A stretch of 64,000 nucleotides of DNA from Kudoa neothunni (taxonomy: Eukaryota > Animalia > Cnidaria): positions 12,281,843-12,345,842 of the forward strand of contig OZ199838.1 in NCBI GenBank assembly GCA_964304625.1. The letters run 5' to 3'. The position numbers and the translations under genes are program-made. Shown piece by piece: positions 26,211 through 37,745 of this stretch. The notes under the pieces were generated by a model. The model was not told where the DNA came from. It ran no database searches and was given only the letters and a program-made list of their open reading frames with translations. The stretch's first letter is position 1; each line of letters begins with the position of its first letter.

Positions 26211-27229
26211 AAACCCGTTTTATAAATAATTAAAATATTATTTTTTAGATGAATATAACTTTGCCTTTATTTTTATTTCGTAGATATATTGTCGAAACGT
26301 AAAACCCACGTAATGTTTATGTGTTGGAGAAAATAAACAATATAAACGCTGTTGTATTCACTTATTAAAAAATATGTTATATAAGTGGTTTATTTTGGTC
26401 AATTTTATGTCCTATTAGAAATAAAACTATGTTATTTCATTAAGTTTAATTATATGATATGATTCACTATATATTAAATACGATCAGATTAAAAAGAACC
26501 GGTATATCACAATATCATTTTAGAAGTTTTTGCTATGTGAATAAATGAATCTTAGGTTGATGTAATAATTAATTTTATTTATATTGCAGCATTAGGTGAC
26601 GAATAACAACGTTTCCTGCACATGTTTCTGATTTAAACAATTTTGTGGAAACTCGGGTTGCTCAATGAAATGTTCCTGTATTTCTCGCAAAACACCTTCA
26701 AATTCACCCACTGAGGATTCGGTGGCATGCATAGACGATTTAATATAGAATTTATCGAAAGATTTGTAATTAGAGTTTTATTATAATAAATTAAAAATAG
26801 ATTCTAGAAATAAAATAACTACATCATACTATATGCATACTTTTGAGGAATATTTTGATGAGTCAAAAAGTTGGTTAAAATATGTGAATAGTCTATAAGA
26901 TAATCTTCAGTTTTCTATAATTCGATTGTAAAAATTTTTGAATGATATCAAATCAATCAAAAATATTTTATTTATACGATAAAATAGTAGCATGTTTCAA
27001 TGGGACTTCAAATAATACAACAATCAAGAGAGGATGTTCTTTAAATTTTTGATTTTTAATAACCTACGTCTATTAAGTTATAAGTTATAACCTTTCAGAA
27101 TCATGTTCGTTACATTTTACCCCAATAGATAGATAACGCCAATAGAACTTATATTTAAATATTAGTGACCGATTAATGTGAGAACTGTATAAATAGATTT
27201 CTCAAAAAGGTGTTTTCTAGAAAATATTA

Positions 27230-28420
27230 CAATGAGAATGAATTTGTTCATTTATTACCGAAATAAGCATCTTTAAAGTACACAATAACTGTAGGAAATG
27301 TCAAGGAACAGTCATTTAATATATCGGAATAGTTGGCGATATTACTACAAACAGATATAGAAAAGAAACTTCCATTTTAAAACCCTATTTCTCATAAATA
27401 TAAAATTTAGAGTCTAAGATTTGTTGGAGTTAGCATATTCCTGGATGGTGGATAAAAATATCGTTAACTAAAATAAAACTAACAGTCACTCTTCCCAATC
27501 AATGACTATTGTCACTATCCAAGTTAATTAGTAGCGGATAGTTTAGACTTTAAGTAAATTGATAATAGAACGGAAAGCTAATCTTAAAGAGTAAGATGTC
27601 CAAATATTGCAAGATAACGTATAGCAGAGTACATGACGTTGAGAGCACAAATATTGGGGGAGCCTGGACAATGTGGCATAGTGGTGTTAGGGCGAGATCG
27701 CATAATTTGAGGTTGCAAGTTCGAAGCCTAGTCCGGGCGTTCCTGTACTCCTAATCCAAAATTAAGTAGGAAGGTTGTAATAATCTCAAAGATATATGAT
27801 TTATCGTGGCCTTGCTTGCAGTTGGGAGGAGAGCCTGGCGGTGGGATAGATCTTGGGCGCTCATAAACGCCTGGGTACAGGAACGAAATACCACCCAGTA
27901 GGGGGTTTCCATAGAGCTGACGCCCGCATTCAGACTAGTTCTGGGTTAGTCCATGGTAAGGTTGTGGTGGTGGTGCTCCGAAACGAGGATGTTTAGTGGA
28001 TTAAAATCCCACACTGCCGCATAAACATAAGTCGCCTTAATATGACGTTGCGGTGCCTAAAGCGTAAATGGGAAAGGTCTAACCAGCCCAAATTTCACAA
28101 CCTAATAAGTTTCGCCAGGAGTTTCACCTTGTAAACAAAAAAACAACGAATTTTGAGGGATGTGGAAAGGAAACCAGAAAAAAATGTTTTAAGTAGAAAT
28201 TTTCGACGATATCGCCGAGGCATCCACTAAAAAATTATAGCATACCTTCAACCTGGCTCTACTGTCATAACCGCTTGATTCAAAAGTCAGGGAACAACCC
28301 ATCATTTCTTTACTCGCCTCGCTTTAAACCGCAATGTAGATTAAGTGAATACTATCACATGAGCCCATACTAAAAGCATTGAGGAAGTTCGAAGTTCTTA
28401 CAAATACAAAATATCACCAA
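27230..28420 (+). mobile_element. Merlin (IS1016/ISXO2-like) transposase relic, copy A, interrupted by a SINE
   Basis: CRKC zinc-knuckle trace (~27290), QPGSTVIT (~28250) and AHTKSIE (~28365). Homologous to 32380-33050. Confidence 0.6.
27662..28145 (+). mobile_element. tRNA-Met-derived SINE, copy 1
   Basis: Head 27662-27738 has acceptor stem GCCTGGA/TCCGGGC, A box TGGCATAGTGG, a CATAA anticodon loop and B box GTTCGAAGC. GC-rich body, then tail CACCTTGTAAACAAAAAAAC. Homologous copy at 33067-33507. Confidence 0.8.
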
Positions 28421-28717
28421 GGAATAGAACATCTTCGGTTAATAAACGTGGTTCTGTCAACATGTAGGGCATCAATTAATATCTCGATGAATTTCAATGG
28501 AGAGGAAAAGTCTGATTTATGGTGATAAAAATATTTTCATTAAAATTTTGTGGTTGAAAGTAAGTGAGACTAATATTATATTCATAAAGTGTATTCTATA
28601 TGCGCTTACCCTTTCATATGTAAGAATTAGGGGATTTATATCAATGTGAAACCTCGAAAAATATTCCAATCTTAATTATAAAACGTAACAGTTCGTATCT
28701 AACTGTATTATAAATAT

Positions 28718-31700
28718 CTAATTTTTGTTTCTCATGTATCCAAAATAGAATCCTATTCCAATTACCACTATCATAACTGGGACCACGACAGCAATAATTC
28801 TAAGTGGAAAAATTATTACAGCAGATTAGATTTTTACTACATTGTATTCTTTGACCTAAAAAATCATAAATAAGTCTAATACACACTTCATATTACGTTG
28901 ATTTATTTGACGTTTCTCCTAAACATTAATTATAGAAATTAACCCAATATATTTATTTTAGGAATACCTCTTTTTATCACAGCAGTTCCAAAAATTTTCT
29001 CATCGTTGCTATGAATTACCCTCACTCGATAATCATTGGTATCTTCAATATCAGAAATTGAGATCTGCTTACAGGATGGGAATGCAGTACAATCTTGACC
29101 AATGACCATGCATTTTTTCACAATCGGTTTAGCGACGTCTTCCCAATTTATTAATTCCCATTTACACAGGGAATTTTCATTCACACCTTGAGGTAGAATA
29201 GTTTCAATTTTTAATGTTTTATCTTCACGTACAATCACTACAGTTATTTGTTTGCTCACGTCCTCATTATGTACAAGTGATGGATCTAAATTAAATTATT
29301 TATAACGTGAATGAATGAACATGTTAATTTGATTTTCTACCGAAATAAATAATTAAAAGAATGAACATATTTATTAATTAAAAAAGAATAAATTTAGTGT
29401 AATAATATTGACTTTTCGGTATAGATATGGATACTTCCGCCGATCTTCCAATAGCAGTTATTAACAATTTATACTCTTTATCCGCTTCGTATCCATTGGT
29501 CACAACGATACTATTGCATAAAGGCACCTGAGTGCATGACGAAAATTGTACAGCAGTATTTGTTGATGGAGTTGTGGGTGTAGTTGGTTTAGGGACAGCG
29601 TTCGCTGCTCTCGCGACTTTCGTTTCATGAGATGCAGATGGTAATGGTAATTTTTGTATTGAACTAAGTGTGTCCTTAACGCTGGGATTTATTTCATCTT
29701 TAAATATTCTCGAAGCGGCGCTTGGTGTTGGATTTAAAGTGGGTGGAGGACAAACAAAAACCTCCTTGAATGTTTTATCTTTTCTTTGAAGTTTAAATTC
29801 GCATTCTGCATCTGGATCGGGAGTAGATAGGGTGCCTACCACTTTAAATCCCTTATCCAAGAAACTTGATGTGAGTGTAAGTGTCGCCATACCTTATCAA
29901 AATCAATAATATTATTTGGAAGTTACAAAATACTAGTTTTAATTCCAGAGTATATTTTCGGTTCGTACTCTTTGTGTGCAATAACTTTGATGTCATATGT
30001 TGATCCTGGAATGAGATTTGTGATAGTTTTTGACTCCTTGCAATGTCCTCTGCAGGGGTAGCTGTCAATGCAATGTGCATTGATGAATGCATTTTTGTCT
30101 GTTATACTAATGTAATATGAACATGTGGCTTGAGTTTTATCTGTCGTTTCATCACCGTCTAGTGCTTTAATCGTAGCTGTCGACTCCGTTACGGTGGGAT
30201 TAGTGGGGCTAAGTACAGATCCCACTTTAGGGTCTACATAATACTATTTAGTAATCTTTTCAAAATATTTAATTTACTTGTGCTAACAAACAGATATTCA
30301 TTAAACTCCGTTGGACTGCTTATACCACTTGATGCAATCTCAATCATCATAGGTCTTCCTTCAGTGAACCCTTGGATGGTCAGGCTACTCTCGCATCCAT
30401 TTCCACAAGGAGAACTACCGTCGCAGTTCGTTGATGTTCCTTGCTTGGTTTCCGGTCTTGGTTTATCAGCTGGAAAATGTTTTAGGGTGCATGAGGTGAA
30501 CTTTGGCTCATTTGTTGGGTTAAAAGGAGACGCATTTAGCGTAGCGCCAGTAGTTGTAATAGTCTTAAACAAACCATCTTGCGGCTCAACAATGACTAAA
30601 TAGCGTTTAAAACCATAACACCTATATTAACATACCAAATTTCGTAGTTTTATATCCATCATAATGATCTCCCGTTAGTTTAATGTTATGGTGTCTGGTT
30701 TGAATCGAAATTTCAACGAGTACTTTATTGTCTGCTAATGTAAGCTCAAAGTTGTCACATGGCGCATAGCATTCCTTTCCTTCAGCTCCGCAAATATAAG
30801 AAAATGGAGTTTTATTTGTAATCGTGGCATCTCTTATACCAAATCGGCATATTTCAGTTGGGAAATTATTTGTAAATTTAAGATTGTATTTATTTTTCTC
30901 ATTGGCCGATTTAAAGGCCACATAATGTTGTGGTTTGAAAACATCGATATTCTTTTTCATATATGAATTTGGCATATTATAAAAGAAGCTTGGATAGTTT
31001 TCACATTGCATTTCATAATACGGAATCATTAAGTTAAATTCTACGTCGATATCACTAGCAGTAGCACAGTCGGCGCCAATTGCTCCTTCGTTATATTGAA
31101 CCCCCTTGTACTTAACGGGGCATTTCACATTAGAACATGTTGTTGTAGAAAATTTTAATTTCTGATCGGCTGAGGTTGATATTGCAACTTGAGGATTCAC
31201 GAGTAATGCTAAATGATTATGAATATTTGTATTGTTAAAATAATTGGTACGTATTTCGAATCCAAAAACATTTCCTCCTGTAATTCCAGCTGCTGCTGCC
31301 GTAGCATCATTTCCGACAAAAACATAGATATATTTGTTTCTTGGGGAGAGTATGTTATATGTCAATTTATTTCCATCATTGTTGCATGGAATCACGCATT
31401 TATTCGGATGTCCGTTAGCATTTCCAGGGCATGTATCTATGTCCTCATAAGCTGTTAAACCACTGTTAGGTTTCTTCATTAGACAATGCTTTTCAGCTCC
31501 ATAATCTGTACCACTCAACTTAAGTTTTAATTTTTTTTCCCTAGCATCATCAATAATTTGGTAAGAAAGAACTTTCGCATCGTTTGCTGTTGTTGCTGCT
31601 GGTAGGCTATCATCGGCAGGATAATAATAATGGATATCTATTAATAATATTAATTTATGAATATAATGCCTTATATACTCAACAAAATAGTCACTACTAT

Positions 31701-31724
31701 TAAAATATTTATCGCTGGTCTCAT
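28718..31724 (-). CDS. Novel Cys-patterned, FN3-like multidomain type I membrane protein, paralog A
   Basis: Signal peptide MRPAINILIVVTILLNIHYYYPA. About 7 modules of 4 Cys on phase-1 exons, one with FN3-like TITNLIPGSTYDIKVIA. Two micro-exons (22 and 15 nt). TM IIIAVVVPVMIVVIGIGFYFG and tail YMRNKN*. All introns GT-AG; reading frame intact. Confidence 0.85.
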
Positions 31725-32379
31725 AAGTTTATAAAAAATTCAAATAAGATTAATTTTATAACTTTTCGGCAATAAAAGGACGACAATATAACGAAAATAT
31801 TTGTTTACATAAATTGCATTCATCATAGTATAACATTCTTGTTATGTATATCAATAAATATTATACTAATAGTATTAGCTAAGTTCTTCCAAATATATGA
31901 TTACCTACTCCTTATCCTATATTTTTATTAAATTTATCATATTTTATCTTTTTAAAGTAAACAATCTAAAAATTTCTGTTTTTGCCTCTTGAGTATATTG
32001 GCTTAACGACTAATGATCATTATTACTATAGAATTATAAATGTGTCCAAGATTGTTACAGAAAATATTAAATGACAAATTTTTGTCGTAATTGGTTAAAC
32101 AATCTGACGAAATAATCTAAGATACTATTCCATTGATAAATTTTATACATTAGTAATACTCGTTTTATTAAAATTGATAACAACTCATTATTTTAAGTAA
32201 TTTAGTCTGAAGAAAATTTAATAATTAATTCTCTGTAATTTTTTAGTAAATAACATAGCTAATTAGCATACTATGAGGAATACTTCATTTTTTTAATGTA
32301 AATAAAAAAAATGTTTAAAATCATCGAATAACGTAATCAAACCTCAGGATGAGAAAATATGCACAAAACCAAAACCATG

Positions 32380-33050
32380 CAATAGCAGGGTCAAATTGTA
32401 TTAGCATCTTCATCCTTCCGAGTAATTATATGAAGTGTCATGAACCAGCCATTTAATACATTGAAAAATTAGCAATACTACTAGAATAGGTGAATAAAAG
32501 AAACGTATATTTTTGAGGCGCTAATTCTGATTAATATGAAAATTTAACTTCATAATTATTCATGTTAACATATTATTGGTCGGCGGGCCAAAAAAGAGTT
32601 AATTGGGCACAATTAGCAACTATTGCCATTATCTTCGCCAGCTAGTATCGGGTTTTTTAGACTTTAAATGAATAATATTAGAGGAAAGAAAATAGTTGTT
32701 GAGATTGATGAATCTAGATTTGTCATAGTAAAACATAACAGAGGGCTTGTCATTAATGGAACATGAGTTCTTGGAGATGTAAAAAAGTACACCAGAAAAA
32801 AAGATGCATTTAAAAGAATTTTGTTACGGAACGGCTGAAGCATTCATCAAAAAATTATAGCGTATTTTCTATCTAGCTCTGTTATCATATCTGAGTGATT
32901 CAAGAGTAACGGAGCAATCCACAATTTCTGTACTTACTTCGCAGTAAACCATAACATAGAATATGTAAATATTGCCATAAGAGCATATACAAGAACAATT
33001 AAATGAACTCGGGGTGTTATCAAATACAAAATATCACAAAGAAAAAACCA
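32380..33050 (+). mobile_element. Merlin (IS1016/ISXO2-like) transposase relic, copy B
   Basis: IVVEIDESRFVIVKHNRG...GT*VLG (~32692-32778) and VNHNIEYVN...AYTRTI (~32944-33000) match the Merlin motifs VEIDES, KYNRG, WVFG, VNH and HTxxIE. Confidence 0.8.
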
Positions 33051-33066
33051 TCTATGATTTATGTAA

Positions 33067-33507
33067 TTTTTTTGTTTTCAAGGTAAAACCCCTGGCGCAA
33101 CTTATTGAAGCGTGGAGTTATGGCTGGTTAGACATTTCCATTAATTCTGTAAGCATCGCAGGATTAATAACATCTACCTCCTCGCCTCTTAGCTTTCTGC
33201 GGTACTGTGGGAGTTTAAACTATTAGTACCCCCGTCGGTGGGGCCACCACCATCCTAAACCCTACCCATATAACGACTTGGACTCAATAGAGATTTCAAG
33301 AGTGTTAATATACCCCCCTCTGCTAGATCGACCTATAACTGCAGGTGAAATTATGCTTATAATGCGATCATATTCTATCAAAAGTTCCCATTATGGAATG
33401 AAAAAACGCTCTAATGAAAGCAGTAGACTGATCAGCGATGAAAATCGGACTCAGTACCTCCGGTTATTGCGTCCAGTCACCACACCATATGGCTATATGT
33501 CATCGGC
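33067..33507 (-). mobile_element. tRNA-derived SINE, copy 2 (same family as 27662-28145)
   Basis: Minus strand carries A box TAGCCATATGG and B box GAGTCCGATTT. Body GGATGGTGGTGG...TAAACTCCCACAGTACCGC and tail GGGGTTTTACCTTGAAAACAAAAAAA align with copy 1. Confidence 0.72.
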
Positions 33508-33791
33508 TCCGGTTAATAAACGTAGTTCTGTCAACATGAATGGCATCAATTAATATCTCAGTGAATTTCAATGGAGAAGAAAAATCTGATTTGTGGTGAT
33601 AAAAATATTTTCATTAAAATTTTGTGGTTGAAAGTAAGTGAGACTAATATTATATTCATAAAGTGTATTCTATATGCGCTTACCCTTTCATATGTAAGAA
33701 TTAGGGGATTTATATCAATGTGAAACCTCGAAAAATATTCCAATCTTAATTATAAAACGTAACAGTTCGTATCTAACTGTATTATAAATAT

Positions 33792-36700
33792 CTAATTTTT
33801 GTTTCTCATGTATCCAAAATAGAATCCTATTCCAATTACCGCTATCACAACTGGAACCACGACAGCAATAATTCTAAGTGGAAAAATTATTACAGCAGAT
33901 TAGATTTTTACTACATTGTATTCTTTGACCTAAAAAATCTTAAATAAGTCTAATACATACTTCATATTACGTTGATTTATTTGACGTTTCTCCTAAACAT
34001 TAATTATAGAAATTAACCCAATATATTTATTTTAGGAATACCTCTTTTTATCACAGCAGTTCCAAAAATTTTCTCATCGTTGCTATGAATTACCCTCACT
34101 CGATAATCATTGGTATCTTCAATATCAGAAATTGAGATCTGCTTACAGGATGGGAATGCAGTACAATCTTGACCAATGGCCATGCATTTTTTCACAATCG
34201 GTTTAGCGACGTCTTCCCAATTTATTAATTCCCATTTACACAGGGAATTTTCATTCACACCTTGAGGTAGAATAGTTTCAATTTTTAATGTTTTATCTTC
34301 ACGTACAATCACTACAGTTATTTGTTTGCTCACGTCCTCATTATGTACAAGTGATGGATCTAAATTAAATTATTTATAACGTGAATGAATGAACATGTTA
34401 ATTTGATTTTCTACCGAAATAAATAATTAAAAGAATGAACATATTTATTAATTAAAAAAGAATAAATTTAGTGTAATAATATTGACTTTTCGGTATAGAT
34501 ATGGATACTTCCGCCGATCTTCCAATAGCAGTTATTAACAATTTATACTCTTTATCCGCTTCGTATCCATTGGTCACAACGATACTATTGCATAAAGGCA
34601 CCTGAGTGCATGACGAAAATTGTACAGCAGTATTTGTTGATGGAGTTGTGGGTGTAGTTGGTTTAGGGACAGCGTTCGCTGCTCTCGCGACTTTCGTTTC
34701 ATGAGATGCAGATGGTAATGGTAATTTTTGTATTGAACTAAGTGTGTCCTTAACGCTGGTATCTATTTCATCTTCAAGTATTCTCGAAGTAGCGCTTGGT
34801 GTTGGATTTAAAGTGGGTGGAGGACAAACAAAAACCTCCTTGAATGTTTTATCTTTTCTTTGAAGTTTAAATTCACATTCTGCATCTGGATCGGGAGTAG
34901 ATAGGGTGCCTACCACTTTGAAACCCTTATCCAAGAAACTTGATGTGAGTGTAAGTGTCGCCGTACCTTATCAAAATCAATAATATTATTCGGAAGTCAG
35001 AAAATACTAGTTTTAATTCCAGAGTATATTTTCGGTTCGTACTCTTTGTGTGCAATAACTTTGATGTCATATGTTGATCCTGGAATGAGATTTGTGATAG
35101 TTTTTGACTCCTTGCAATGTCCTCTGCAGGGGTAGCTGTCAATGCAATGTGCATCGATGAACGCATTTTTGCCTGTTATACTAATGTAATATGAACATGT
35201 GGCTTGACTTGTTTCTGTATCTTCAGCGCCTGCTAATGCTTTAACTACAGCTGTCGACTCGGTTACGACTGGAATGTTGGAGCCAAATACTGACCCTTCT
35301 TTAGATTCTACATGATATAATTTAGCAATATTTTTCGGAATATGTCAATTACTTGTCCCAACAAACAAATATTCGTAACGGTTTCCTGTAGTTAGCGTAG
35401 CACTTGACGCAATCTCAATCATCATAGGTCTTCCTTCGGTAAACCCGTGGATCGTCAGATTATCCACGCATGTTGTTGCACAAGAAGTGCCGCTGTCACA
35501 ATTCGCTCCTGTCCCCGCTCCGGCAGCTGGTCTTGGTTTATCTGCAGGGAAGTGTTTTATGACGCACTCATTAAATGTAGAATCACCATTTGGTTTAAAA
35601 AGAGACGCATTTAACGTAACAACAGTAGTTGTAATAGTCTTAAACAAACCACCTTGTGGCTCAATAATGACTAAATGGCGATTTAAATAACTAACTTTGC
35701 TATAATATACCAAATTTTGTAATTTTATATCCATCGTAATCGGTCCCCGCTAGTTGTATATTATGGTGTCTGGTTTGGATCGAAATATCGACGAGTACTT
35801 TATTGTCTGCTAATGTAAGCTCAATGTTGTCACATGGCGCATAGCATTCCTTTCCTGCAGTTCCGCAAACATGTGAAAATGAAGATCTAGATGGAACTGT
35901 GGCATCTCTTATACCAAATCGACATATTTCAGTTGGGAAATTATTTGTAAATCTAAGATTGTATTTGTTTTTAACCTCAGCCGATTTAAAAGCCACATAA
36001 TATTGTGGTTTGAAAACATCGATATTCTTTTTCATATATTGATTTGGCATATTATAAAAGAAGCTTGGATACTTTTCACACTGCATTTCATAATACGGAA
36101 TCATCAAGTCAAATTCCACTTGAATATCGCTAGCAGTAGCACAGCCGGCGCCAGCTGCTCCTTCGTTATATTGAACCCCCTTGTACTTAACGGGGCAATT
36201 CACATTAGAACATGTTGTTGTAGAAAATTTTAATTTCTGATCGGCTGAGGTTGATATTGCAACTTGAGGGTTCACGAGTAATGCTAAATAATTATGAAAA
36301 TTTTGATCAATCAAATAATTGTTACGTATTTCGAATCCGAAAACATTTCCTCCTGTAGTTCCAGCTGAAACGGCTTGAGCATCATTTCCGACAAAAACAT
36401 AGATATATTTGTTTCTTGGGGAGAGTATGTTATACGCCAATTTATTTTCATTATTGTTGCATGGAATCACGCATTTAGTCGAATACCCGCTAGCACTTCT
36501 AGGGCATGTATTTATGTCCTCATAAGCTGTTAAACCACTGTTAGGTTTCTTCATTAGACAATGCTTTTCAGCTCCATAATCTGTACCACCCAACTTAAGA
36601 TGTACTTTATTGCCGGTATCGTCAATAATTTTATAGGAGAGAACTTTTGCATCGTTTGCTGTTACTGCTGGTGGGCTATCATCGGCAGAATAATAATAGT

Positions 36701-36793
36701 GGATATCTGTTAATAATATAAATTTATGAATATAATGTCTTATATACTCAACAAAATAGCCACTACTATTAAAATATTTATCGCTGGTCTCAT
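33792..36793 (-). CDS. Novel Cys-patterned, FN3-like multidomain type I membrane protein, paralog B
   Basis: Same exon structure, Cys pattern and YMRNKN tail as paralog A, with a near-identical TM segment. Reading frame intact, including exon ~35008-35307, which the ORF track misses because it has no start codon. Confidence 0.85.
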
Positions 36794-37745
36794 AAGTTTC
36801 TAAAAAATTCAAATAAGATTAATTTTATAATTTTTCGGAAATAAAAGGACGACAATATACCGAAAACTTTTATTTACTTAAATGGTACTCAACGATGTGT
36901 AGTAATCATTTTTATGTATACCAATAAATATTATACTAATAGTATTAGTTTTCTTATTATAATTATCCGACTATATATTCCTTAGACTTGATTTATACTG
37001 CATTTACCATATTTAACTCTCATAGTAGGGAATTGAACAATTTCTGTTTTAAACTATTCATATGTATTGTTTTGATACGTAATGTTATGATCATTACAGA
37101 ATTTTAAATAGGACATGTTTTGTTACAGAAAATACTAAATGACTAATGTCGCCATTATTCGTATAAGAATCAGGCAAAATGATCTTAAATACTATTCTAT
37201 TAATAAATTTTATGAGACAGAAATGCTCATTTTCTTAAAATAGATAACAACTCATTGTGTAAAATAATCTACTCTGAAGGAAAGGCAAGAATAATTCCTT
37301 ACAATTTTTTAATAAATCTTTTAGCATATACAAATAAATTTATAATTTTCAAAATATTATATCAACTTTTTTTTAACCATTTAGAATAGATACATCCAGA
37401 CCTTAGCATTAAGTAATTTTCCGTTAACTCTTTAAATTATTTTAGATTTGCACATTTGAGAATTTAGTAAATATAATAAATGTTTCATAATAATATATAT
37501 TTTATAAATTGATATATATTACTAAATGTTTTGTATTTATTTCAAGGTTCGAAATTGCTGTATTGAATTTATTTTGTGCGGTATATTTGACCATGTTCAG
37601 AGCAAAAAAATTTTCGGGAAAAGTTTATGGAAACTGATAATTATAATATATCTTAAACACTTAAAGTTTTTAAGAGTTGACACGCCAAAATATGTGATCA
37701 TAATTGAGCATATATTTTACAATGACAATTATTGAAAAACAATTA

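What the first reader, a model, noticed from the sequence alone, without database searches (positions are those of the whole stretch)
27230..37330. Old duplication with a recently homogenised 3' half and mosaic 5' half: segmental gene-conversion signature
Presumably neutral parts of the duplicated unit (Merlin relic, upstream region, 5' introns) are clearly diverged, roughly a quarter to a third of positions by eye. In contrast, ~28435-30135 vs ~33509-35207, covering exons, introns and 3' flank, are nearly identical. The switch is abrupt, within an exon at QATCSYY. Identical islands also occur in the 5' half (GTDYGAEKHCLMKKPNSGLTAYEDI; LLVNPQVAISTSADQKLKFSTTTCSNV), and a small divergent island lies in the 3' half (AASRIFKDEINP/ATSRILEDEIDT). 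Purifying selection cannot explain identical introns. Patchwise conversion or unequal crossover can, and would generate mosaic variants.
Basis: partly seen in the sequence, partly recalled or inferred. Interest (0 to 1): 0.8.

Follow-up and report, generated by a model that had tools for sequence, protein, structure and literature searches.

The report
Gene conversion between tandem surface-protein genes

Summary
Observation confirmed. Copies A (28433-32251) and B (33507-37317) form a tandem duplication of about 5.07 kb holding a minus-strand gene. A-B mismatch splits into four segments: 9.6% (31701-30686), 28.4% (30685-30136), 3.8% (30135-29686) and 0.5% (29685-28581). Non-coding sites alone repeat this: upstream flank 27.5%, zone 3 10.4%, zone 2 31%, zone 1 2.3%. 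dS runs from 0.00 to 0.63 between A and B but is even (0.33-0.64) in dispersed paralog pairs. So selection and local mutation rate are excluded. The near-identical tract is bounded on both sides inside the unit, which excludes one unequal crossover. Its left end falls exactly at a 444-bp repeat found only in B. Best reading: an old duplication followed by several rounds of interlocus gene conversion. The organism is Kudoa neothunni: the 18,219-bp mitochondrial contig, 40.2 Mb and three chromosomes match PMC12239612. The gene encodes a signal peptide, FN3-like modules and a membrane anchor, from a lineage-restricted family. Corrections: the "big exon" is two exons, and the spacer carries two independent repeat insertions. 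This scan had already reported the same process on other DNA of this genome; I confirmed it in two further tandem clusters. The mechanism is ordinary, in an undescribed family.

The parts
27110..27650 (.). Old dispersed-repeat relic in copy A's downstream spacer. Its homologue in B is 32400-32763 (62% identity). Probably Merlin-derived.
   Evidence: 12 other genomic copies at 66-70%. Three of those copies lie beside or overlap DDE_Tnp_IS1595 matches.
27660..28143 (+). Dispersed non-autonomous repeat (about 485 bp, SINE-like head) found in copy A only. Inserted after the duplication.
   Evidence: at least 412 candidates, 79-85% identity. The empty site in B is at about 32763-32784.
28144..28434 (.). 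Unique downstream spacer of copy A with old divergence (about 71% identity to B 32784-33053).
28435..30133 (-). Zone 1 in copy A: the most recent conversion tract(s). It runs from the 3' two-thirds of exon 4 through exons 5 and 6, the micro-exons and the TM exon to 284 nt of 3' flank. The core 28885-29685 has 1 difference in about 800 nt; the shoulders have about 3%.
   Evidence: non-coding 2.3%; dS 0.00-0.04
29686..29717 (-). Small divergent island inside zone 1 (6 differences, 5 amino-acid changes). Probably an unconverted remnant.
   Evidence: No third-party donor in the genome. Derived states are split between A and B.
30134..30685 (-). Zone 2 in copy A: unconverted segment (intron 3, exon 3, intron 4 and the first third of exon 4). 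It keeps the old divergence: 28% mismatch, dS 0.55-0.63.
30686..31795 (-). Zone 3 in copy A: older, patchy conversion tract(s). It covers 71 nt upstream of the ATG, exon 1 (signal peptide, 31724-31679), intron 1, exon 2a (31637-31251), the 42-nt intron 2 and exon 2b (31208-30636). Mismatch is about 10%, dS 0.19-0.20.
31796..32251 (-). Upstream region of copy A with old divergence (27.5% mismatch to B 36865-37317). It marks the right-hand end of the duplicated unit.
32400..33062 (.). Downstream spacer of copy B: relic homologue (32400-32763) and unique spacer (32784-33062).
33063..33506 (-). Dispersed repeat (444 bp) found in copy B only. It is related to the A-only repeat but in the opposite orientation. 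Its edge coincides with the left end of the near-identical tract. An 11-nt stretch on both sides of it is a candidate target-site duplication.
   Evidence: 208 candidates, 66-80% identity; the empty site in A is continuous at 28433-28443.
33507..35207 (-). Zone 1 in copy B (partner of A 28433-30133).
35208..35759 (-). Zone 2 in copy B (includes exon 3 at 35670-35353).
35760..36864 (-). Zone 3 in copy B (exon 2b 36283-35711, intron 2, exon 2a 36706-36326, intron 1, exon 1 36793-36748, and the proximal 5' region).
36865..37317 (-). Upstream region of copy B with old divergence.

Best explanation
A unit of about 4.5-5 kb was duplicated in tandem long ago. The unit holds a Merlin-type relic and a gene for a single-pass surface protein. 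The two copies then diverged to about 30% at neutral sites, and each gained its own insertion of a dispersed repeat in the downstream spacer. Since then, non-reciprocal copying between the two paralogs (interlocus gene conversion during repair of DNA breaks) has overwritten parts of the gene several times. Older, patchy events cover the promoter-proximal 70 nt through exon 2b (zone 3, about 10% apart). A later event covers exon 4 to the 3' flank (zone 1, about 3-4% apart). The latest event covers its core (0.1-0.5% apart). Zone 2 (exon 3 and its flanking introns) and the outer flanks were never overwritten, or not for a very long time. The recent tract ends where usable homology ends: on the left exactly at the 444-bp repeat found only in B, and on the right at the already diverged zone 2. 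What is shown: the age layers, their edges, their presence at neutral sites, intact reading frames in both copies, and the same pattern in other tandem pairs but not in dispersed pairs. What is inferred: the repair mechanism, the number and order of events, the idea that heterology stopped the tract, and that both genes are expressed.
For: Identity profile and BIC segmentation: 9.6% / 28.4% / 3.8% / 0.5%. Non-coding sites only: upstream flank 27.5% (n=451), zone 3 10.4% (n=154), zone 2 31.0% (n=84), zone 1 2.3% (n=619). dS per exon, A against B: 0.19, 0.20, 0.63, 0.55, 0.02, 0.04, 0.00. The dispersed sister pairs L035/L037 and L036/L038 give 0.33-0.64 throughout. ML trees: A+B are sisters at 100% in all three zones with the same topology, but the A-B distance is 0.113, 0.400 and 0.017; the dispersed pairs give a zone rate ratio of only about 1.3: 1.55: 1. 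Sawyer-type permutation: A-B p<=2e-4, the tandem pair L033/L034 p<=2e-4, dispersed pairs not significant. Clustering within zone 3: p=0.0003. The tract is bounded on both sides within the unit: spacer 71% and 62% identical on the left, zone 2 on the right. The B-only repeat ends at 33506 and the tract starts at 33507, while A has the uninterrupted site. Derived states at the remaining differences are split 11 to 12 between A and B. All exons are open in both copies, with dN/dS about 0.4-0.6. A third cluster (C2:6.817-6.836 Mb) shows partner switching in long runs.
Against: The assembly therefore rests on published facts only: a HiFi hifiasm-meta assembly of QV 48.5 but only about 7x k-mer coverage, purged and manually curated (PMC12239612). 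There is no ortholog from another Kudoa species to date the duplication or to show which copy was the donor. The split of zone 1 into core and shoulders has only modest support (BIC 1574.4 to 1570.5). No GC-biased conversion signal appears in the converted zones. There is no expression evidence for either copy.
Confidence: 0.85

Rival explanations
1. Assembly artefact. The near-identical tract is a collapsed, chimeric or over-corrected stretch of a low-coverage meta-assembly, not real biology.
For: Published k-mer coverage of the parasite reads was only about 7x, and the assembly was purged of haplotigs and manually curated. I could not check reads.
Against: The tract is not identical. It carries 31 differences in a structured pattern, and their derived states are split between the copies. 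HiFi reads are longer than the whole 10-kb pair. The two units differ by about 11% overall and by independent repeat insertions, so overlaps offset by one unit should not be merged. Assembly QV is 48.5. The same kind of pattern appears in two other tandem clusters. The older layers (zone 3, about 10%) cannot come from a collapse.
Confidence: 0.05
2. A recent whole-unit duplication, followed by fast divergence of zone 2, zone 3 and the flanks. The cause would be diversifying selection, local hypermutation, or ectopic conversion from third-party paralogs. On this view the diverged parts are the derived ones.
For: Exon 3 and the 5' part of exon 4 have the highest dN in every pair of the subfamily. 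In some windows zone 2 of A and B is as far from each other as from the other paralogs.
Against: Non-coding flanks and introns are as diverged as zone 2 (27.5-31%). dS in zone 2 is 0.55-0.63 with dN/dS about 0.45-0.6, so there is no excess of replacements. Dispersed pairs show no raised dS in that exon. A and B stay sisters at 100% in zone 2, and no other paralog is closer. Each copy has its own old repeat insertion. Root-to-tip path lengths are similar across zones once the zone rates are allowed for.
Confidence: 0.04
3. Unequal crossover between misaligned units produced a hybrid copy. After a copy was lost, a pair remained that is identical in only one part.
For: The units are tandem, direct and about 5 kb apart, which is the substrate for unequal exchange.
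Against: A single exchange gives identity from the breakpoint to the end of the unit. Here the tract is bounded on both sides: the spacers to its left are 62-71% identical and carry different insertions. At least four divergence levels would need several exchanges plus compensating losses.
Confidence: 0.04
4. Purifying selection on coding sequence and on regulatory elements in introns and the 3' UTR keeps the tract identical.
For: The tract encodes the membrane-proximal modules and the TM anchor, which have the lowest dN in the family.
Against: Synonymous sites (dS 0.00-0.04), a 127-nt intron with 0 differences and 284 nt of 3' flank are near-identical between A and B. The same introns and flank are 16-42% different among the other paralogs.
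Confidence: 0.01

Closest known systems
Human fetal G-gamma / A-gamma globin genes
   Same: A tandem duplication unit of about 5 kb. Part of the gene, introns included, is almost identical between the paralogs while the rest keeps older divergence. The edge is abrupt and lies at a sequence discontinuity. The accepted explanation is interlocus gene conversion.
   Different: The globin edge lies at a simple-sequence stretch in an intron. Here one edge lies at a repeat insertion found in only one copy and the other lies inside an exon, next to an old diverged segment. Here at least four age layers are visible. The organism is a myxozoan and the gene belongs to an undescribed family.
Concerted evolution with escape from conversion (sequence-dependent conversion models, from my own knowledge: Walsh 1987; Teshima and Innan 2004)
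   Same: Segments that keep converting stay similar. A segment that diverges past the homology threshold stops converting and becomes a barrier. This predicts sharp islands of old divergence such as zone 2 and the flanks. It also predicts conversion in nearby pairs but not in dispersed pairs, as seen.
   Different: These are models, not a gene system. The homology threshold in Kudoa is unknown and was not measured here.
Mosaic gene formation in variant surface antigen families (Trypanosoma VSG, Borrelia vlsE, Plasmodium var; from my own knowledge)
   Same: A large family of surface-protein genes in a parasite, arranged in clusters, with segments copied between members to give mosaic proteins. 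The membrane-proximal part is more uniform than the distal part.
   Different: There is no sign of an expression site fed by silent cassettes. Both copies are complete genes with their own 5' regions and signal peptides. The events seen are old on an evolutionary scale (0.5-10% divergence since conversion), not somatic switching. No expression or antigenicity data exist.
Other conversion mosaics in this same genome (earlier notes s1-687407, s1-692986, s1-687419, s1-682521, s1-695933)
   Same: The same gene superfamily, the same process, and the same organism assignment. One note describes a tandem pair that is identical except in one exon.
   Different: This is a different locus and subfamily, with a three-exon N-terminal part. 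New here are the layered ages, a tract edge at a one-copy repeat insertion, and the contrast between tandem and dispersed pairs.

Membership tests
Interlocus (non-allelic) gene conversion between tandem paralogs | A paralogous tract much more similar than the surrounding paralogous sequence, at neutral sites too | tested here: met
   Non-coding mismatch is 2.3% in zone 1 against 27.5-31% in the flank and zone 2. dS is 0.00-0.04 against 0.55-0.63.
Interlocus (non-allelic) gene conversion between tandem paralogs | The tract is bounded on both sides by older divergence, with no change in copy number | tested here: met
   Left edge at 28434/28435 and right edge at 30099-30133. The spacer beyond the left edge is 62-71% identical.
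Interlocus (non-allelic) gene conversion between tandem paralogs | The fragment is longer than chance allows, given the polymorphic sites of the family (Sawyer/GENECONV logic) | tested here: met
   A run of 270 concordant polymorphic sites, p<=2e-4. Within zone 3, p=0.007 (longest run) and p=0.0003 (clustering).
Interlocus (non-allelic) gene conversion between tandem paralogs | Coalescence depth of the pair differs between segments beyond what segment-specific rates explain | tested here: met
   A-B ML distance is 0.113, 0.400 and 0.017, against a rate ratio of about 1.3: 1.55: 1 in dispersed pairs.
Interlocus (non-allelic) gene conversion between tandem paralogs | The two tracts exist as separate molecules' worth of sequence in the reads (not an assembly artefact) | not testable with these tools
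Only published assembly facts are available.
Programmed antigenic-variation cassette system | Silent partial donor cassettes feeding one expressed locus | tested here: not met
   A and B are both complete genes with a signal-peptide exon, open exons, a TM exon and their own diverged 5' regions.
Programmed antigenic-variation cassette system | Switching within an infection; mutually exclusive expression | not testable with these tools
   No RNA or population data. The source paper reports that very few transcriptome reads map to the parasite.
Fibronectin type III domain (Pfam PF00041) | Sequence match at or above Pfam's gathering score | tested here: not met
   Exon 4 scores 21.2 bits against a cut-off of 25 (E=3.5e-4). 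The other exons have no match.
Fibronectin type III domain (Pfam PF00041) | FN3/Ig-like beta-sandwich fold | tested here: inconclusive
   The exon-2b model (pLDDT 79.9) matches two-domain cytokine-receptor ectodomains with Foldseek probability 1.0 and E about 1e-4, but TM is only 0.26-0.32. The other modules were not folded.
Merlin DNA transposon (relic in the spacer) | Homology to elements that encode a DDE_Tnp_IS1595-type transposase | tested here: inconclusive
   The relic itself has no Pfam match. Three of its 12 genomic homologues lie beside or overlap PF12762 matches. TIRs and TSDs were not examined.

The most novel reading that the evidence does not exclude
The unconverted island (exon 3 plus the start of exon 4) is not a passive leftover. 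On this reading it is kept different by selection, in a family whose members otherwise homogenise their membrane-proximal stalk. The family would then work as a diversity-preserving mosaic system for a host-exposed module, and could be a substrate for the antigenic variation reported in myxozoans, whose mechanism is still unknown.
Probability: 0.12. Interest if true: 0.6.

Novelty: new member of a known kind. Interest (0 to 1): 0.3.

Why it matters
On its own this is a clean, well-layered example of concerted evolution between tandem duplicates. It shows a conversion tract stopping exactly at an insertion found in only one copy. Its wider value is as context. It lies in a large, lineage-restricted family of FN3-like surface proteins of a myxozoan fish parasite. 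That family is not mentioned in the genome paper (PMC12239612), and it has only 17 database relatives among 1.84 billion representatives. Antigenic variation is reported in myxozoans without a known mechanism (bioRxiv 10.64898/2026.02.11.705288). Conversion in tandem pairs but not in dispersed pairs of this family shows how its repertoire is reshuffled over evolutionary time. It also warns that gene trees and duplication dates in this family will be wrong unless they are computed segment by segment.

Tried and rejected

2. Pfam on all exons gave only a sub-threshold fn3 match. Pfam on the spacer ORFs gave nothing.

3. The word-based protein search with the largest open frame found nothing in its length range. 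That says nothing about longer or shorter relatives. The exhaustive HMMER search then found 17 unnamed relatives.

4. Third-party donors. None of six paralogs is closer than the partner copy in any zone. No genomic donor exists for the 29686-29717 island.

5. GC-biased conversion. Neither GC nor GC3 is raised in the converted zones.

6. For a while I read the six nearest paralogs as pseudogenes, because of stops in the 'big exon'. I rejected this: the stops fall at two shared positions that are introns, and with the corrected model all exons are open in seven of the eight genes.

7. My first guess for exon 1 (ATGATGAAT at 31826), which is broken in B, was rejected. The conserved 46-nt signal-peptide exon at 31724-31679 is present in all eight genes.

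8. ARAGORN and Rfam found nothing for the SINE-like repeats.

9. A full-length spliced protein was never assembled.


Full report
**What is there**

The window is G000:C1:12,281,843-12,345,842 of a 40.26-Mb genome in four contigs. Contig sizes are 17.15, 12.04 and 11.05 Mb, which leaves 18,219 bp for the fourth. The published assembly of the myxozoan Kudoa neothunni has 40.2 Mb, N50 12.0 Mb, three chromosomes, 30.41% GC and an 18,219-bp mitochondrial contig (PMC12239612). It was recovered from PacBio HiFi data of a yellowfin tuna. The match settles the organism.

**Observation**

Repeat finding, BLAST and a global alignment show a direct tandem duplication: copy A at 28433-32251 and copy B at 33507-37317, offset 5067-5075 nt.

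- In 28435-30133 the copies differ at 31 of about 1,699 positions.
- In 30134-30685 they differ at 28%.
- In 30686-31795 they differ at about 10%.
- Upstream of 31796 they differ at 26-28%.

BIC segmentation prefers four segments: 9.6%, 28.4%, 3.8% and 0.5%.

**Gene model**

The gene lies on the minus strand.

The six nearest paralogs (L033-L038) have stop codons or frame changes at the same two places within what looked like one big exon. All eight genes share a 46-nt first exon: M-R-x-x, then a hydrophobic run, then a phase-1 GT donor after codon 15.

| Feature (copy A) | Coordinates |
|---|---|
| Exon 1 (signal peptide) | 31724-31679 |
| Intron 1 | 41 nt |
| Exon 2a | 31637-31251 |
| Intron 2 | 31250-31209 (42 nt; open in frame in A and B only) |
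| Exon 2b | 31208-30636 |
| Exon 3 | 30595-30278 |
| Exon 4 | 30233-29934 |
| Exon 5 | 29892-29413 |
| Exon 6 | 29285-28968 |
| Two short conserved blocks (probable micro-exons) | about 28918-28897 and 28853-28836 |
| TM-and-tail exon | 28800-28719 |

Exons 2a to 6 are all phase 1-1. Every exon is open in A and in B, and in seven of the eight subfamily genes.

Pfam gives only a sub-threshold fn3 match, on exon 4. A model of the exon-2b domain (pLDDT 79.9) resembles two tandem FN3/Ig-like sandwiches of cytokine-receptor ectodomains. An exhaustive HMMER search found 17 unnamed relatives among 1.84 billion representatives, from anonymous ENA and Logan contigs. The product is therefore a type I surface protein made of FN3-like modules, from a lineage-restricted family with at least about 80 loci in this genome.

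**Why selection or mutation rate cannot explain the pattern**

Non-coding sites alone show the same layers:

| Region | Mismatch | Sites (n) |
|---|---|---|
| Upstream flank | 27.5% | 451 |
| Zone 3 non-coding | 10.4% | 154 |
| Zone 2 introns | 31.0% | 84 |
| Zone 1 introns and 3' flank | 2.3% | 619 (includes a 127-nt intron with no difference) |

Synonymous divergence between A and B is 0.19 and 0.20 (exons 2a, 2b), 0.63 (exon 3), 0.55 (5' part of exon 4), 0.02 (3' part of exon 4), 0.04 (exon 5) and 0.00 (exon 6). In the dispersed sister pairs L035/L037 and L036/L038 it is 0.33-0.64 in every exon.

ML trees per zone give the same topology, with A+B sisters at 100%. The A-B distance is 0.113, 0.400 and 0.017, while the dispersed pairs give a zone rate ratio of only about 1.3: 1.55: 1. 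The same introns and 3' flank are 16-42% different among the other paralogs.

**Formal tests**

I ran a Sawyer-type permutation over the 1,613 polymorphic sites of the eight-gene alignment. For A-B the longest concordant run is 270 sites (p <= 2e-4). The other tandem pair L033/L034, 7 kb apart, gives p <= 2e-4. Both dispersed pairs are not significant.

Inside zone 3, the clustering of differences is significant (p = 0.0003). The identical islands are not conserved across the family. The 'mosaic 5' half' therefore holds.

**The spacer and the left edge**

The downstream spacers do not align in register, for the following reasons.

- Copy A carries a 485-bp dispersed repeat (27660-28143; at least 412 genomic candidates at 79-85%).
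- Copy B carries a related 444-bp repeat in the opposite orientation (33063-33506; 208 candidates at 66-80%).
- Around these insertions the true homologues are A 27263-27649 with B 32400-32763 (62%), and A 28166-28434 with B 32784-33053 (71%).
- The first of these is part of an old dispersed repeat.

The B-only repeat ends at 33506 and the near-identical tract starts at 33507. Copy A is continuous there, and an 11-nt stretch occurs on both sides of the insert.

The repeat copies are 15-33% from their relatives, while the tract is at most 3.8% diverged. The insertion therefore most likely predates the conversion and marks where usable homology ended. That is an inference. The right edge abuts zone 2, which was already old.

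**Mechanism**

A tract bounded on both sides inside the unit needs non-reciprocal copying, or a double exchange. One unequal crossover would not produce it. At least four divergence levels imply repeated events.

The 23 tract differences that can be polarised split 11 to 12 between A-ancestral and B-ancestral states. The six-difference island has no donor elsewhere in the genome. Both facts fit old remnants left by patchy repair, plus later mutation in both copies.

No GC bias is seen. The direction of copying cannot be told without orthologs.

**Generality**

L033/L034 is also a patchwork: 200 nt are identical next to stretches at 20-26% mismatch. Three tandem family members at C2:6.817-6.836 Mb share about 1 kb of complete identity, and elsewhere the odd-one-out copy switches in long runs.

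Earlier notes of this scan report the same process in other clusters of this genome. This finding is therefore another instance of something the scan has already seen, not a first sighting.

**What could not be done**

Arguments against an artefact:

- The tract has a structured set of 31 differences.
- The two units are distinct (about 11% apart overall, with different insertions).
- HiFi reads are longer than the pair.
- Assembly QV is 48.5.
- The pattern recurs at other loci.

Against this, the published k-mer coverage was only about 7x. I leave 5% for an artefact.

**Literature**

The genome paper mentions gene conversion only as GC-biased conversion, and it does not describe this family. 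A full-text search for myxozoa, gene conversion and paralog returned nothing relevant. A 2026 preprint on Sphaerospora molnari states that antigenic variation occurs in myxozoans but that its mechanism is unknown.

**Verdict**

The mechanism is ordinary: concerted evolution of tandem duplicates, with one segment that escaped. It occurs in an undescribed family of surface proteins in a parasite. Interest is modest.

Noticed in passing
window 27660-28143 (+) and 33063-33506 (-): A family of dispersed, non-autonomous repeats of about 0.45-0.49 kb, with hundreds of genomic copies. The head carries an A-box-like TGGCATAGTGG and the tail is A-rich. ARAGORN and Rfam do not recognise it. It is probably a tRNA-derived SINE and remains unclassified.
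   Followed up: partly
window 31250-31209 (copy A) and 36325-36284 (copy B): A 42-nt GT..AG intron that is a multiple of three and free of stops in A and B, but has stops or a frame change in all six nearest paralogs. If retained, it would add 14 residues. A and B differ at 9 of its 42 positions, as expected for neutral sequence.
   Followed up: partly
window 28967-28801 (copy A) and the same region in L033-L038: Two short blocks are conserved in all eight paralogs between exon 6 and the TM exon (about 28918-28897 and 28853-28836). They look like micro-exons of 22 and 15 nt. This is the region where earlier notes propose nested twin introns. I did not test that proposal.
   Followed up: no
whole genome: Merlin-type DDE_Tnp_IS1595 transposase matches are very abundant. 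Of 503 candidates in 40 Mb, 150 were scored and all passed the Pfam cut-off. Many have open frames of 150-400 aa without stops.
   Followed up: no
G000:C2:6816802-6835750 (L044, L046, L045): Three tandem members of the wider family share about 1 kb of complete identity. Elsewhere the odd-one-out copy switches in long runs, which indicates recent and repeated conversion among three copies.
   Followed up: partly
L036:1244-1633 (G000:C2, about 1.109 Mb): Exon 2a of this paralog has a length that is not a multiple of three, and the best reading frame over that stretch contains stops. This could be a frameshifted pseudogene or a shifted splice site.
   Followed up: no
window 30637-31206 (-), model m7d1eff29a6ac: The exon-2b region (190 aa, six near-invariant cysteines) folds as two FN3/Ig-like sandwiches. 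The N-terminal 'cysteine-rich' part of the protein therefore consists of further FN3-like modules, not a different fold.
   Followed up: partly
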